Assembly (NCBI GenBank): GCA_043228905.1
Contig: JBHGNT010000213.1
Span: forward strand, 1 to 51,959
Source: Azolla caroliniana
Lineage: Eukaryota > Plantae > Polypodiophyta
Direction: 5' to 3'
Length of the DNA stretch: 51,959 bases
In this document: one piece after another, positions 9,322-18,084 of the stretch
How positions within the stretch are numbered: the stretch's first letter is position 1
How the letters are laid out: the number at the start of each line of letters is the position of its first letter
Position numbers and translations under genes: made by a program
Notes under the pieces: generated by a model
Told to the model about the DNA's origin: nothing
Seen by the model: the letters and a program-made list of their open reading frames with translations, nothing else
The model's database searches: none

Positions 9322-12300
9322 CTATGGAAAGATGCCACTAACTTTGTAACATGTCGCAATCCTGTCAATTGCAATGAGATATGCAGCTGTCCGAAAGTTG
9401 CAACCCTACAAAAAGAATTTATTCTCACATCATATTATTTTTCTCTAAAATAAATGCTTCATAACACAATCTTTTACCATTTGTGTTGCTGTACACCTTA
9501 CGTTTTCCCAGCTTACAAGCATAGTCTCCTCCAAACCAGAGGACACAAAATCTGCTTCTGTATTACTACACATCATAACAATAATCATATTTATAAATTA
9601 GATAATGAAGTTCACTGTTACTATTATTATTATTACTATTGTCAACAAACTCAACAATTTAGAGACCCAGTTAATAGAACATACACAATTTGTGGCCAAC
9701 AATCGTAAAAACAAAAAATGAAGTTCTTATCAACATTCTCAAAAAACATTGGATACTGACCAGCTAAATAGAATATATCAAATTTGCAACCAACAATCAC
9801 AATACAATACATTAATAAAATATACAAAAATTTGTGGCTCCACAACAATAACAACAATACACGAGACCCACTAATATAATGTTTTCACTTGTATCATTTG
9901 ACTCTCATTCAATAAGTAAATAGAAACCTTTTATCCAATTTAATCTCAAAACATAAATAAGAGATTCAATGAGAGATCAACCAAATTAATAAAACCCTTG
10001 TTAGACAACTTAAAAAAACTTCTAGGTTTTCCAATTCATCAAAAAATTCCAGGTTGTCACTAAGTATTTTTTTTCTTTGACATGATGCTATTCTTAAATT
10101 TCCATTTTTGCCAAGGACCTCTTCTACAAGTTTTTTTAATTTCCAATCTCACCAATATTGTTTTTACCCTTTCACATGATTATTTTTTTCATGTTACTTT
10201 AATTTGTGTTTTACCCTTTCACAAGTTGTCGGCGAAGGTCTTCCGAAAGCCTATGCCCCTTTCCAAATTCAAGTTCCATTGCATCCAGAAATACCTAGTA
10301 TAGTAGTAATAATAGTCATAATAATAATAATACAAACTAGTTCAAAAATCCACAGCATTCAATCAGCAAATTGAATTTTTTATGTATGCTCAACCTGTGT
10401 ATCGAAAAAAATATCACCTGTTTGTCACGTTCCTCCATTCTTCGGCTCATCCGACCAAAGGGCATATGATTGAGATTCTTCAACCACTCAAAATACGATG
10501 CAATCACACCGCCCTTCCAAAAGAAAATACAGAAAAGAAAATGTTTTTTTCCTGTCTCTAAAATTCTTCTTAGGTATACTTTAGTCTATATGGGTGTGTA
10601 GATGTCATCCAATGAAATCAAAGTGATGCAAGAGTGTGTCTCTCTTCAATGCATGCAGGTCATGCCCATCTACACGACCACTCCAGTAATCCTAATCATG
10701 GACAAATAAATGCTGGCATAATCCAACCCGAAAGGTGCCTCCCTCACTTTGGAAAACTCTTCATCTTGGATTGACCCATGTTAGAATGTTAAGTTTCACT
10801 TCGTCTACGTTCAGAATCTTAAGTGTTTGGCTAATGAGATCCTTTGGAACCCTCGGGATTTATAATAATTCAATTATAATTATTTTGGCTTGCTGTTCTC
10901 AAAGACAAGACAACATTTTAAGATGCAATCTGTTGTTCAGTTTCATTGGCCATTTGGCCTCTCTCAGTAATTTGTCATGTACGTAGTAGGCCCTCATCTG
11001 GTGGACCACAATCTCACCACCCTTGTCATTCGATAGATAAAGGCCATTATTCCTGCCATTTCAGGTGTTTCCCTCATTTCGGAGACCTCTCCATACTGGT
11101 TGGATTCAACCCACGAGACCTTTTGAAGATAAAAATTACACTTTATCTCACTTGAGAATCTTACATATGTGTATAGATGACAAGATTCTTTAGTCATGTC
11201 TTATTCTCTATTTATTTACTTATTTTATTTAGTTACATTAATTTTGGTTTGTTGTTCTCAAAGATGAGACAACAATTTAAGATGTAATCCTTGTTTGTTC
11301 TTATACACCATTTTGGCTTCTTAAAAGATGTTGATCTCTCTTTATCTCTCTCTCTCTCTAAATTGGGAGGATAGAGGTTTGAGTCCTATATGGACCATAG
11401 GAGACCAAGTAGATGATTGAATGGAATGGTGGACATTATAATTAGCTTTGGTCATGGTGATGACTTTGAGAAATATGGATTGCATATAACACATATATGC
11501 ACTGAGCTGAATCCAATTACAGAGTGTGGGAAAAAAGGAGATTCTGTTCTCAACCTAAGTAGTGCAATGCAAAAAAGAGGAAACCTTGTGGATGTGATCC
11601 TCCCTAAATATCCAACTTTGAAGTTGGATGAAGTTCAAAATGTGGGGGATTCAGAAATCTCTAGCTCTCCCCAATAGACATGGAATCCAATGGGAATCAA
11701 CGAAAAAGATCCAAAAGCAAAAACTTGTGTACCATTTAGATGCAAGATATGGAAAAATGGTTTGAAAGATGGGATACAACGAACTTCTTCATCATGCATC
11801 AATAGATTCCTTTGTGAATGAAGCCTTTTTGTAATGCCTATGTATCATGACATGGGAAAATTGTGGAGGCTCATGCATCACACATCAGACTACAAACGTT
11901 GCACCTAACTACAAAACCATATTCTTCATCATTAAACAGGAAAACTGCACACGTCAATACATGTTATAGTACATCCCATTATTGTGCATCCAAACCATTG
12001 CTTCCATATCACTTATCTCACACTCACTAGGATGTGAGATGGGGAATTGTAGCACAAGTGATGAGACTAGTTGAATATGCACACTTTGCCGTAAACCAGT
12101 TTGGGAATTTGAGTATCACACTTCGATACAAGCTCTGCCTTTCATCACATTCAAGAATGCTGTCCACACATCTTTGACTAAACCCAATCCTTGCATGAAT
12201 TTCTCTCAATGTCACAATGTGCAATCTCAATTACAATATTCATTAGTAAAGCTCTTGACCATTGAGGGCTGTTACTCAGTTTCACATGTATTATGTGAAA

Positions 12301-15300: not shown

Positions 15301-18084
15301 ATTTTCTAACAGCCTAATTGACAAGAAATATATGTAACAAATCATCACGTCAGACCATCGAAAAATACAACACATCCATCAACAATAAAACCACCTCAAT
15401 ATTAACTCACAGTACTGGTATGTTGACCAACATTGCCAAATCCTTGTACTACAAAAGACTTTCCTCTAACACCCAAATTGAAACCCAGTTCTTTCATGCT
15501 TTCCTGAAAAAGATAATATGTTAGCTAAATTCTGGTGATCCTTCCTCTTCATGTTGATAATCTTAACAATACACAATGAAAAGACTCAGAATTTCTGGAC
15601 CTGATGGTTCAGAAACTCCCTCAAGCAAAAATACACTCCGAGTCCTGTAGCCTCTTGCCTACCATGGATTCCACCCTAAATTGTATTGATTAAACAGTTT
15701 CAGTACTCATTCATCATTACCCAATGGTAGATTTTTCAACGAGATACAAGCTTATCCATCAGGTCTTGGCACTATATTATTTCTTCATTATCATCACATG
15801 TTAATAATGTAAGAACAAGCTGTTGGTTGTCAAATAGACCTCTTCAAGGGGCTTTCCAGTTACACAGGCTGAGCTATTGATATCATCACTGCACAGTTGC
15901 TCATATGTGTCCTGAAAGGGAAAATAAATGTTATAGATAAAATGCAGTGCAGACAAACCATGTGTGCAAGGATTATCTTACTTTAATCCAAGCCATTTCT
16001 TGAGATCCCGTTCCATAGTCAGGAGCTGGAACATCCTGCACTATATGCTCAAATAATGAGACACCTGAATACCAAAAGTGTAAACAGGATACTCAGGATG
16101 ATCAATCACACACTCACAATTGCTGGACCAATAAAGTTCTTCTTCACCAGTTCACTTGTGTATCTCCTTATCAGTGATTCTTTCTCGCTTATAGAATACT
16201 TGGTAGGATCTGATAATATAAACATTCTACTCATATCAATGGAGATACACATTATCGTAGAGAGTTCATTGAATTTTTTTTCCAGACATAAGCATACCAA
16301 CTCGAATGCCACCCTTTGCACCACCAAATGGAACATCAACAAGAGCACACTTGAAAGTCATTAATGCTGCAAGAGCCATGGTCTCATTGGCTTCCACATT
16401 AGGAGCCATACGAATTCCACCTTTCACTGATATCAAAATGAGAAGAAATTTGAGTTAGATCTACATATATCACATGCCATTTTAAAAAATATACGTTCTG
16501 GTATCTTAAGCTACCAGGTGAAATTAACTAGAGGAATCATGGCTTCATCAATTGACAAGTGATTAAAGTAGATTCCAGGTGATATACTGACAAAGATAAA
16601 TTTCTAGCATTGATCCGTAAATAGGTGAATAAAAGAAATATGGAAAACACAATAAATTTCCTTTAAATATATGCACATTTGAACTATTTTTTAATAGTAA
16701 AATGTAATAAATAAACCCCCTACCAATGCATAAACAAATTAATAACGATACAATTTAAACCATGTCAATTGACGTTTGTATCCAACCATTCACAACAAGA
16801 AAAGACTTCAAACTGACAGAAATAACTCTTTGATGAAGCAATAACTACGGTAGTTAAACATAAAAAATATCATTTTGAAAAAAAACGAATAGACATCCAT
16901 TAGAAGATGTATGTTATAGATGTACACTACGACATCCCTATTCACATGCTCAAGAGAAGAGATGAGTGTTGGACTTCTAAATACACATCAATCAAGAGTA
17001 TTGAACGAATATAAAACTGATTTACCCAGACATACATTCTGTACATTTGGAAATGGAAATATATGGTTTTAGGATTTCGAAAAAAACCTGGAAGACGATG
17101 ATGAGAATGTTGAGCTCTGTAGGCTTCGATAAGTTGAACTGTCCCATCAGAGCGTTTGAGTGGGAAATGAAGCTGGAGAATATTATTACAAGCCTACACA
17201 AGAAAACATATCTTACATAGGTATTCACATTCACTTAACCAATTGACAGTGTATAAAACCAGACGAATATACCTTGATTTGAGCAAGGATATCTGGTGTA
17301 GTTGATGTTAATTTAGCTGCTCTATCATAGTAAATATCAACCGCTTCAAGGAAAGACAGTTCTCCTAGAGAAATAAGGTGTGAATGATGAGTCCCATCAT
17401 AGTTTTCATTTATATTATTATATTAACCAATGCTTCTGAGAAGCCTAAAAAAGTAATGAAGATTAGCGTTATTAGGTGCCTTCTCATGTCTTCATTCTTA
17501 CGCATCAATGCATTACTTATAGTTTGCATTTACTTGAAGTGTATTAATCAATGCTTCTGAAATGCCTAAAAAGTTCATGAAGAGTATCTACTCATCACTT
17601 ACGCATCGAGTTGAGAAAAGTGGCAAAAGGAATAAATAATAATGTCATGCTGCTGTTTTCTAATCATAAACACACACAGACCGATGCATAGTAAGTATGC
17701 AGACAAACACATGTAGCCATGTATCTGTGCCATGTGTGTCGAATTATTTATGCATATAAATACTCTGTTCACCATTTTGCCCAATGAGATGAGTGGAGAG
17801 ATGATAATGTTGTCTAATTTTAACATTCAAAGTTGATAGAGTATACACATCAGTGCAAAATAAAAAATCAGATGCTAAAAACCCGTTCTTCCTCTTTCAT
17901 CTAAATAAGAAATCAGATGCTAAAAACCTCTTTCAGCTAAATAAGGAAGCATACGCATACCTTCAGGACATCCATGCAAGAGAGCTTTCTGAGGAATGAA
18001 ACGCTTCTCCGTTTTGAAGGCCGCATTCTGCTTCCATAAAGGAATGGTACGAAGAGAAACATACCTTGGCCAGGGCTTCCACAT
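9322..18084 (-). CDS. GDH: Glutamate dehydrogenase, animal GLUD1-like type, probably mitochondrial; 16 exons, ~512 aa
   Basis: GT-AG exons with consistent phases: 18084-17961, 17364-17273, 17193-17088, 16426-16298, 16209-16118, 16035-15982, 15911-15840, 15675-15601, 15503-15411, 14968-14819, 14019-13921, 13335-13231, 10513-10418, 10294-10215, 9565-9478, 9405-9322 (1539 nt). Motifs: [94 protein letters not shown]. The start codon ([13 protein letters not shown]..., basic and presequence-like) is the least certain part. Confidence 0.92.
10880..11358 (+). mobile_element. RTE-like LINE family B 3'-end fragments (two tandem) in GDH intron 12
   Basis: Shares the TTGTTCTCAAAGA..AGACAACA..TTAAGATG 3' UTR block and the upstream UTR with 41330-41730. 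(CT)n tail. Confidence 0.8.
11700..12369 (+). mobile_element. RTE-like LINE family A 3' fragment in GDH intron 12
   Basis: Colinear with the reverse complement of ~4720-5360 and ends in a CTCTCTATCTATCT tail. Confidence 0.85.
12463..12619. repeat. Two-copy tandem duplication, ~87-bp period
   Basis: GGCCGT.TAGAA..AAGCAC.CAAATATGA..TTGACCTTCA.AACTAAAATA.GC.CAA.TTGAGATGA occurs twice. Confidence 0.8.

What the first reader, a model, noticed from the sequence alone, without database searches (positions are those of the whole stretch)
9322..18084. Animal (GLUD1)-type glutamate dehydrogenase as an intact, intron-rich plant nuclear gene
Seen: the spliced protein has [65 protein letters not shown] and [15 protein letters not shown]. 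Knowledge (recalled): mammalian GLUD1 has [62 protein letters not shown] and [15 protein letters not shown]. Seed-plant GDH1-3 (~411 aa) instead have FRVQHDNARGPMKGG, RVFTQKIHDLIG, GGSLGR and EWVQN. Inference: this is a separate GDH lineage (animal/protist/some proteobacteria-like), either retained in seed-free plants and lost in angiosperms or acquired anciently. It implies a little-studied branch of plant N/C metabolism. Fifteen canonical introns argue against contamination or recent transfer.
Basis: partly seen in the sequence, partly recalled or inferred. Interest (0 to 1): 0.8.

Follow-up and report, generated by a model that had tools for sequence, protein, structure and literature searches.

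The report
Fern gene for animal-type glutamate dehydrogenase
This fern has an intact, expressed nuclear gene for the long, "antenna"-bearing kind of glutamate dehydrogenase known from animals; seed-free plants and their algal relatives inherited it vertically, and I found no seed-plant copy, which suggests an unstudied branch of plant nitrogen/carbon metabolism.

Summary
Observation confirmed. Window 9322-18084 (minus strand) holds an intact gene of 16 exons and 512 codons. All 15 introns are GT-AG. Twelve are matched exactly by spliced transcript contigs from a near-identical relative.

The protein is a glutamate dehydrogenase (GDH) of the long, antenna-bearing kind that includes animal GLUD1. 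Its closest solved structures are animal GDHs, not Arabidopsis GDH1/2.

Orthologues occur in ferns, lycophytes, mosses, liverworts and streptophyte algae. No seed-plant orthologue appeared in two searches of 5.8 billion proteins. In a rooted maximum-likelihood tree these sequences form one clade (100/99) that follows the species tree. That clade sits inside an all-eukaryote clade (99/98). All 15 introns are shared with a liverwort. This points to vertical inheritance with loss in seed plants, not contamination or recent transfer.

Catalytic residues are kept. The mammalian GTP and ADP regulatory residues are mostly replaced. "GLUD1-type" therefore holds for fold and ancestry, not for purine allostery. 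Bacteria carry the same long form.

The orthologues are already in public databases under automatic names. Eight full-text searches found no paper on them. Verdict: a new member of a known kind, with a lineage pattern that appears unreported. The scan also noted this gene's antenna on this same window (s1-516994).

The parts
9322..18084 (-). Whole gene, ATG to stop: 16 exons, 15 GT-AG introns, 512 codons. Encodes a long-type (antenna-bearing) glutamate dehydrogenase.
   Evidence: model; spliced transcripts; identity
17961..18084 (-). Exon 1 (124 nt): start codon and a basic N-terminal extension, likely a mitochondrial presequence.
   Evidence: It is the first in-frame ATG of the open segment. 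The first 40 residues hold 8 K/R and 1 D/E. The donor is confirmed by joint 17363>17960. The first 16 codons are not covered by transcripts.
17273..17364 (-). Exon 2 (92 nt)
   Evidence: joints on both sides
17088..17193 (-). Exon 3 (106 nt): the [13 protein letters not shown]...YRAQHSHHR block.
   Evidence: Searched alone against solved structures, it hits almost only animal GDH (E 5e-9).
16298..16426 (-). Exon 4 (129 nt): holds K90, K114 and the catalytic K126 equivalents (KGGIR, MTFKC, GGAKGG).
   Evidence: Pfam ELFV_dehydrog_N, E 2.9e-17; residues; joints
16118..16209 (-). Exon 5 (92 nt): the [15 protein letters not shown] block.
   Evidence: Its only solved-structure hits are animal GDH.
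15982..16035 (-). Exon 6 (54 nt): DVPAPD, the D168 equivalent.
15840..15911 (-). Exon 7 (72 nt): [12 protein letters not shown].
15601..15675 (-). Exon 8 (75 nt): GGIHGR. H209 and R211 are kept; R217 is L.
15411..15503 (-). Exon 9 (93 nt): the GFGNVG dinucleotide-binding motif.
   Evidence: Joint 14968>15411 fixes the exon 9/10 junction.
14819..14968 (-). Exon 10 (150 nt): first part of the coenzyme domain.
13921..14019 (-). Exon 11 (99 nt)
13231..13335 (-). Exon 12 (105 nt): EAANGP, the N349 equivalent.
10418..10513 (-). Exon 13 (96 nt): [11 protein letters not shown] (S381) and the start of the antenna's ascending helix.
   Evidence: The loose end at 13230 reads into it. Its only solved-structure hits are animal GDH.
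10215..10294 (-). Exon 14 (80 nt): the rest of the antenna.
   Evidence: The intron positions on both sides are shared with Adiantum and Marchantia.
9478..9565 (-). Exon 15 (88 nt): pivot helix. The H450 and R459 equivalents are S and V.
9322..9405 (-). Exon 16 (84 nt, including the TAG stop): C-terminus ending ...GIFP, as in other plants, the red alga and bacteria.

Best explanation
This is a working nuclear gene of a fern. It encodes a long-type glutamate dehydrogenase, the branch of the GDH family that carries a helix-loop-helix 'antenna' before the pivot helix and that includes animal GLUD1. The gene came by vertical descent from an early eukaryote. It has been kept in streptophyte algae, bryophytes, lycophytes and ferns, and was lost on the line to seed plants, which retain only the short GDH1-3 type and the NADP type. 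The enzyme most likely acts in the mitochondrial matrix. There it would interconvert glutamate with 2-oxoglutarate and ammonium, using NAD(P)(H) and the conserved catalytic lysine. It is probably not inhibited by GTP or activated by ADP as mammalian GLUD1 is. Shown here: the gene structure, transcription in a near relative, family placement, the distribution among sampled genomes, and which residues are conserved or replaced. Inferred: the reaction, the location, the oligomeric state and the lack of purine control.
For: Gene model: 16 exons, all GT-AG, 512 aa. Twelve introns are matched by spliced contigs, and 9 of 11 listed exon differences from that relative are synonymous. Family: Pfam ELFV_dehydrog_N and ELFV_dehydrog on single exons. 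Exons 3, 5 and 13 alone find animal GDH as their best solved relatives, and for exons 5 and 13 their only ones. The Adiantum orthologue (77% identical to the window protein) scores 458 bits against GLUD1, 317 against Thermotoga GDH and 276 against Arabidopsis GDH1. Its AlphaFold model (pLDDT 85.9) has helices 407-429, 438-445 and 450-476 where the antenna and pivot helix lie. Its 39 best Foldseek matches are all animal GDHs. Descent: in the careful IQ-TREE run, support is ferns 100/99, vascular plants 99/93, land plants 100/99, streptophytes 100/99 and eukaryotes 99/98, rooted on short-type GDHs (same topology). All 15 introns are shared in place and phase with Adiantum and Marchantia. Distribution: every hit of 590 bits or more to the Adiantum protein is a seed-free streptophyte. 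Host context: a BEACH-domain gene and retrotransposon remains flank it. Residues: K90, K114, K126, D168, R211, N349 and S381 are kept. R217L, R261T, Y262F, R265A, K289A, E292K, H450S and R459V are replaced.
Against: No enzyme assay or localisation exists. The transcripts come from a close relative (organism B), not certainly from the window's own species. They do not cover the first 16 codons, and I could not lay reads on introns 13-15. No metazoan, ciliate or chlorophyte sequence could be put into the tree, so the link to GLUD1 itself rests on the solved-structure comparisons. 'No seed plant' rests on lists of the best 120 of 8000 scored candidates. That is strong for angiosperms and weaker for gymnosperms and hornworts, whose proteomes are sparsely deposited. 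Exon 10 alone is closer to Thermotoga GDH than to GLUD1. The bacterial sister of the eukaryote clade is poorly supported (69/80).
Confidence: 0.88

Rival explanations
1. The gene entered the streptophyte ancestor by horizontal transfer from a bacterium such as Bacteroidota or Acidobacteriota, and gained its introns later.
For: Bacterial long-type GDHs are as similar to the fern protein (52-56% identity) as non-plant eukaryotic ones are. They share the ...GIFP C-terminus with the plant and red-alga proteins, which the opisthokont and amoebozoan proteins lack.
Against: All eukaryotic sequences, including fungi, holozoans, amoebozoans and a red alga, form one clade with the streptophytes at 99/98. 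Bacteria lie outside it. Any transfer would therefore predate the split of the major eukaryote groups, for example at the mitochondrial endosymbiosis.
Confidence: 0.06
2. The stretch is contamination or a mis-assembly: animal, protist or bacterial DNA in a fern assembly.
For: The only point in favour is the surprise of finding a GLUD1-like protein in a plant.
Against: The gene has fifteen spliceosomal introns at the same places as in the Adiantum and Marchantia genes. Its nearest relatives are two other ferns. A DNA run of a related organism covers exons and introns at 90-95% identity. Composition is uniform with the flanks. Neighbours on the same contig are typical of a plant nuclear genome.
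Confidence: 0.01
3. The gene is a decaying or silent relic, on its way to the loss already seen in seed plants.
For: The regulatory residues of the mammalian enzyme are replaced. The 2.7-kb intron 12 has taken up foreign sequence.
Against: The frame is intact and all catalytic residues are kept. A full-length spliced transcript contig (1798 nt) exists in a close relative. Nine of 11 listed exon differences are synonymous and the other two are conservative, I>V and K>Q. The same residue replacements occur across all plants, fungi and amoebozoans, so they reflect an ancestral state, not decay.
Confidence: 0.04

Closest known systems
Mammalian GLUD1 / GLUD2 (bovine and human mitochondrial GDH; e.g. 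PDB 3etd, 1l1f, 6g2u) and worm GDH (8qf0, 8s3g)
   Same: The alignment runs end to end (fern orthologue 58-501 on bovine 47-498, 45-46% identity, 458 bits). The two domains, the catalytic and substrate residues, an antenna insert and a pivot helix are all shared. These are the best Foldseek matches at TM 0.85.
   Different: The stretch from the EWxKN motif to the SGL motif, which holds the antenna, is 54 residues against 62 (8 shorter). The GTP-site residues R217, R261, Y262, R265, K289, E292 and H450 and the ADP-site residue R459 are replaced; only H209 is kept. The N-terminal region before the first conserved block is shorter and unrelated.
Seed-plant NAD-GDH, short type (Arabidopsis GDH1 6yeh/6yei, GDH2 8owm)
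   Same: It belongs to the same superfamily with the same catalytic machinery. Both are named mitochondrial GDH, and a fern guard-cell study reports GDH1/2/3 orthologues in ferns (PMC11579433).
   Different: Those proteins are about 411-414 aa with no antenna. They share only 35% identity and 264-276 bits with the fern orthologue. In the tree, the four short-type sequences I could obtain (archaeal and bacterial, none from plants) are separated from the long type by a branch of 1.2 substitutions per site.
Bacterial long-type GDH of about 470 aa (Bacteroidota, Rhodothermota, Acidobacteriota, Gemmatimonadota, Poribacteria, some Proteobacteria)
   Same: They share 50-56% identity and the same insert length (51-57 residues), and end in GIFP. 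The model of a Rhodothermaceae protein shows the same helix-loop-helix and best matches animal GDH at TMq 0.93.
   Different: They have no presequence and no introns, and they keep R217 (ATGRGV), unlike the plant proteins. They lie outside the eukaryote clade.
Long-type GDH of early-diverging fungi, holozoans and dictyostelids (e.g. Batrachochytrium, Sphaeroforma, Polysphondylium)
   Same: They fall in the same eukaryote clade (99/98), have the same insert length, and also have L in place of R217.
   Different: The C-terminus differs (G-x-IF-x). Only 1 of 9 Sphaeroforma introns coincides with a plant intron, which chance alone could give.

Membership tests
Glu/Leu/Phe/Val dehydrogenase superfamily | N-terminal dimerisation/substrate domain (PF02812) followed by the NAD(P)-binding domain (PF00208) | tested here: met
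   Single exons of the window hit PF02812 (E 2.9e-17) and PF00208. Both domains are on record for every orthologue.
Long, antenna-bearing GDH (the GLUD1 kind) | Closer in sequence and fold to GLUD1 than to short-type GDH | tested here: met
   The orthologue scores 458 bits against GLUD1 and 264-317 against short types. Foldseek ranks 1-39 are all animal GDH. Window exons 3, 5 and 13 agree. Exon 10 alone prefers Thermotoga GDH.
Long, antenna-bearing GDH (the GLUD1 kind) | Insert of about 50 residues after the S-Y-F-E-W motif that forms an ascending helix, a coil and a short helix before the pivot helix | tested here: met
   The window has 54 residues between EWxKN and SGL, against 62 in bovine GDH. 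In the two short-type rows where the motif was found (Priestia, Staphylococcus), only 59 residues follow it to the C-terminus. The orthologue model shows helices 407-429, 438-445 and 450-476. The structure is predicted for the Adiantum orthologue, not for the window protein itself.
Long, antenna-bearing GDH (the GLUD1 kind) | Catalytic Lys126 and substrate-binding K90, K114, D168, R211, N349, S381 (bovine numbering) | tested here: met
   All seven are conserved in the window protein.
Long, antenna-bearing GDH (the GLUD1 kind) | Branches with the other eukaryotic long-type GDHs in a rooted tree | tested here: met
   The eukaryote clade has 99/98 support and the streptophytes 100/99. No metazoan sequence id could be obtained, so animals are represented by unicellular holozoans.
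Mammalian-style allosteric GLUD1 | GTP inhibitory site (H209, R217, R261, Y262, R265, K289, E292, H450) and ADP site R459 | tested here: not met
   Only H209 is kept. The others are L, T, F, A, A, K, S and V respectively. The list of site residues is from my own knowledge of the bovine structures. The numbering was checked on the 3etd alignment.
Long, antenna-bearing GDH (the GLUD1 kind) | Mitochondrial matrix location through an N-terminal presequence | tested here: inconclusive
   The first 40 residues have 8 K/R and 1 D/E and lie ahead of the first conserved block. No targeting predictor was available. NCBI's 'mitochondrial' label for the Selaginella protein is automatic.
Long, antenna-bearing GDH (the GLUD1 kind) | Hexamer of two trimers with intertwined antennae; dual NAD/NADP use | not tested
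   No complex prediction or assay was run. E275 is kept and S276 is L, which does not settle coenzyme preference.
Seed-plant NAD-GDH (GDH1-3, short type) | About 411 aa, no antenna, branches with short-type GDH | tested here: not met
   The window protein is 512 aa with the insert. The orthologue is 35% identical to Arabidopsis GDH1. It is separated from the short type by the longest internal branch of the tree. No plant GDH1-3 sequence was in the tree.

The most novel reading that the evidence does not exclude
Streptophytes ancestrally ran two unrelated mitochondrial GDHs, and the seed-plant line discarded the antenna-bearing one. The antenna is also not an innovation of animals or ciliates tied to purine allostery, as reviews state. 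It is an old module already present in bacteria and in the first eukaryotes, and it served some other control or assembly role before the GTP and ADP sites were added in the animal line. Seed-free model plants (Marchantia, Physcomitrium, Ceratopteris) would then allow a genetic test of what an antenna does without purine regulation.
Probability: 0.5. Interest if true: 0.6.

Novelty: new member of a known kind. Interest (0 to 1): 0.45.

Why it matters
Work on plant GDH rests almost entirely on the short GDH1-3 enzymes of angiosperms. [quoted passage not shown] This gene shows that ferns, lycophytes, bryophytes and streptophyte algae carry a second GDH of the animal kind.

Three consequences follow. 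GDH activity, mutants and expression data in Marchantia, Physcomitrium or ferns cannot be read through the angiosperm gene set alone. The loss of this enzyme is a datable change in central N/C metabolism on the line to seed plants. The plant and bacterial proteins offer natural antenna-bearing GDHs without the GTP and ADP sites, which is useful for asking what the antenna is for.

The limit on novelty is that the sequences are already public and automatically named. What is new is the recognition of the pattern, not a new kind of protein.

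Tried and rejected
1. The search of 1.84 billion representative proteins with exon 10 alone returned only 20 hits. Most were fragments; its use was to yield P0008, a mis-modelled Closterium orthologue that seeded the word searches.

2. A possible extra exon at about 10040-10148 (frame with [16 protein letters not shown]) is not needed. 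Exon 14 joins exon 15 in frame, matching all homologues.

3. An alternative acceptor at 14989, paired with a donor at 15416, is ruled out by the transcript joint 14968>15411.

4. The third word search, seeded with a chytrid protein, gave fungi, unicellular holozoans and dictyostelids but no metazoan. The tree therefore lacks GLUD1 itself.

5. The genome scan for bacterial relatives returned only long-type loci. I took the short-type outgroups from plasmid records instead.

6. Exon 15 alone finds nothing meaningful among solved structures.

7. Intron sharing with an opisthokont: 1 of 9 Sphaeroforma introns coincides with a plant intron, which chance could give in roughly one case in ten. I do not use it as evidence.

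8. Eight full-text literature searches and three paper look-ups found no description of this plant lineage. 'MpGDH' in PMC10808223 is glycerate dehydrogenase.

9. Rfam found nothing credible at the very deeply covered 51-nt stretch in intron 10.

10. Joined step: the spliced protein has no reference, so I handed it to no search, fold or database tool. Searches were done exon by exon by reference or through the database orthologue P0036. The join exists only inside local scripts built from coordinates, for alignment, the tree and residue mapping.

Full report
**The observation.** I read the DNA around each segment and placed the splice sites by frame, GT/AG ends and homology. A script then confirmed 16 exons and a CDS of 1539 nt. 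That gives 512 codons plus a TAG stop at 9324-9322, no internal stop, and GT..AG at all 15 introns. The introns measure 70 to 2717 nt.

**Transcript support.** One call of read laying was allowed, on 13150-18150. Two runs of one organism (coded B) hold contigs that skip exactly my introns 1 to 11, each with CT..AC ends on the plus strand. One of these contigs is 1798 nt long. These joints settle the one ambiguous junction, exon 9 to exon 10 (15411|14968). At 13230 the contig runs on into letters that are the start of exon 13, so intron 12 is spliced as modelled. The exons differ from the window at a few sites only. Of the 11 differences listed for that run, 9 are synonymous and 2 are conservative. 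A third run (organism A) covers exons and introns at 90-95% identity and is DNA of a relative. The transcripts do not reach the first 16 codons, and I could not lay reads on introns 13-15. The runs are of a close relative or another accession, not provably the window's own individual.

**What the protein is.** Single exons hit the two Pfam domains of the Glu/Leu/Phe/Val dehydrogenases. Searched alone against all solved structures, exons 5 and 13 find only animal GDH and exon 3 finds it far ahead of two weak short-type hits. Exon 10 is nearer to Thermotoga GDH, and exon 15 finds nothing.

A spliced model has no reference, so I sent the joined protein to no search tool. Instead I searched the representative library with exon 10. 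That gave a mis-modelled Closterium orthologue, and word searches from it led to full-length orthologues. The nearest is the Adiantum protein P0036, 77% identical to the window protein over 503 aligned residues. P0036 aligns end to end with mammalian GLUD1 at 458 bits. It scores 317 bits against Thermotoga GDH, and 276 and 264 against Arabidopsis GDH1 and GDH2. Its AlphaFold model (pLDDT 85.9) has a long helix, a coil and a short helix just before a long pivot helix. Its 39 best Foldseek matches are all animal GDHs at TM about 0.85, ahead of short-type enzymes including Arabidopsis GDH1.

**Where it comes from.** The scan's earlier notes call this genome a fern, and my tree agrees. Every hit of 590 bits or more to the Adiantum protein comes from a seed-free streptophyte or from an unnamed sequence that the tree places among them. 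These are two ferns, two lycophytes, mosses, liverworts, Closterium, Spirogloea, Chara and Chlorokybus; Mesostigma was found in the first search. No seed plant appears, although the database holds NCBI's plant proteomes.

The next-best hits, at 52-56% identity, are unnamed eukaryotic transcripts, a red alga and many bacteria. Bacterial genomes hold at least 599 loci of this long type. Early-diverging fungi, unicellular holozoans and dictyostelids have it too.

I built a tree of 85 rows (quick search) and one of 61 rows (careful search, LG+C20 PMSF), rooted on four short-type GDHs taken from plasmid records. Both give the same picture:
- The window is sister to Adiantum plus Ceratopteris (100/99).
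- Vascular plants have 99/93 support.
- Land plants have 100/99 support.
- Streptophytes have 100/99 support.
- All eukaryotes together have 99/98 support, with bacteria outside.
- The bacterial sister, a clade that includes alphaproteobacteria, is weakly supported (69/80).

The gene tree follows the species tree, so the gene was inherited vertically. All 15 introns of the window sit at the same place and phase in the Adiantum and Marchantia genes. Marchantia has two more. The introns therefore predate the split of liverworts and ferns. The flanks hold a large BEACH-domain gene and retrotransposon remains. Contamination and recent transfer are excluded.

**How it probably works.** The HMMER alignment to the bovine chain served as a ruler. 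On it, the window protein keeps K90, K114, the catalytic K126, D168, R211, N349 and S381. It should therefore catalyse the usual reversible oxidative deamination of glutamate.

By my knowledge of the bovine structures, certain residues bind the inhibitor GTP and the activator ADP. Most of these are replaced: R217L, R261T, Y262F, R265A, K289A, E292K, H450S and R459V. Only H209 is kept. The same replacements are seen across plants, and fungi, holozoans and dictyostelids also lack R217. This is an old state, not decay. It agrees with the scan's separate note on this window (s1-516994).

The stretch from the EWxKN motif to the SGL motif, which holds the antenna, is 54 residues against 62 in the bovine enzyme. 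The N-terminal 40 residues are basic (8 K/R, 1 D/E) and lie ahead of the conserved core. This fits a mitochondrial presequence but was not tested with a predictor. Coenzyme preference, oligomeric state and location remain inferences.

**Comparison with what is known.** The protein is a member of the long, antenna-bearing GDH clade by sequence, predicted fold, catalytic residues and tree position. It is not a member of the seed-plant GDH1-3 group. It does not meet the defining regulatory features of mammalian GLUD1. 'Animal-type' is therefore right for fold and ancestry and wrong for purine allostery.

It is also too narrow a label, because bacteria have the same form. A Rhodothermaceae protein modelled here shows the same helix-coil-helix and matches animal GDH at TMq 0.93. 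This sits badly with the review statement that the antenna is absent from the GDH of lower organisms (PMC5372004).

**Novelty.** The orthologues are public and automatically named, for example 'glutamate dehydrogenase, mitochondrial' for Selaginella and 'glutamate dehydrogenase (NAD(P)+)' for Marchantia. The gene is thus a new member of a known kind. In eight full-text searches and three paper look-ups I found no paper that describes this lineage in plants or its absence from seed plants. The library lacks most subscription journals, so this is not proof that it is unreported. I score interest at 0.45. A plant nitrogen-metabolism specialist would find it a useful and mildly surprising correction, and it is directly testable in Marchantia, Physcomitrium or Ceratopteris. 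It is not a new kind of system.

**Limits.**
- No metazoan, ciliate, chlorophyte or plant GDH1-3 sequence could be placed in the tree.
- The absence from seed plants rests on ranked lists of the best 120 of 8000 scored candidates.
- The structure is of the Adiantum orthologue, not of the window protein.
- The joined protein was used only in local scripts.

Noticed in passing
window 11417-11677 (+), inside intron 12 of the GDH gene: An open segment antisense to the GDH gene matches the start of the starch synthase catalytic domain (Pfam PF08323, E 6.8e-7, profile positions 1-56). It looks like a captured or decayed gene fragment in the 2.7-kb intron.
   Followed up: partly
window 14578-14628, inside intron 10: A 51-nt stretch is matched by contigs of very high depth (about 3800 and 14000) in runs of two different organisms (B and C). 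The flanks of those contigs do not match the window. It is probably a piece of some very abundant RNA or repeat. Rfam gave nothing credible.
   Followed up: partly
window about 23100-49000 (-): The upstream neighbour is a large BEACH-domain (neurobeachin/BDCP-like) gene. Its exons hit PF15787 (E 5e-35) and the neurobeachin WD40 propeller PF20426 (E 5e-19). One open segment of 997 aa (45983-48976) has no Pfam hit.
   Followed up: partly
window 211-924 (+), 5528-6070 (-), 51381-51941 (-): Retrotransposon remains lie at three places: a copia-type RT (PF07727), an RVT_1 RT fragment, and a gypsy integrase SH3 domain plus chromodomain at the window's end.
   Followed up: no
window about 18150-18740: Dense microsatellites lie just upstream of the GDH start codon. 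In translation they read as runs of EG, PS, HT and YI, that is GA/CT-rich and CA/TA-rich repeats.
   Followed up: no
P0067 and loci L001-L080 (bacterial genomes): Bacteria of many phyla (Bacteroidota, Rhodothermota, Acidobacteriota, Gemmatimonadota, Poribacteria, Calditrichota, some Proteobacteria) encode a 470-aa GDH with the same insert as the eukaryotic long type. The model of P0067 has the helix-coil-helix and best matches animal GDH (TMq 0.93, 47-49% identity). Reviews state that the antenna is absent from lower organisms.
   Followed up: partly
L087 (Marchantia gene) against the window: Marchantia has the 15 fern introns plus two more, one in the presequence region and one after residue 302. 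Intron positions in this gene have been almost frozen since the land-plant ancestor.
   Followed up: yes
P0034, P0037 (Logan transcript proteins, no names): Two unnamed sequences branch between Chlorokybus/Mesostigma and the remaining streptophytes (100/98). They probably come from an unsampled streptophyte alga such as Klebsormidium or Coleochaete.
   Followed up: no
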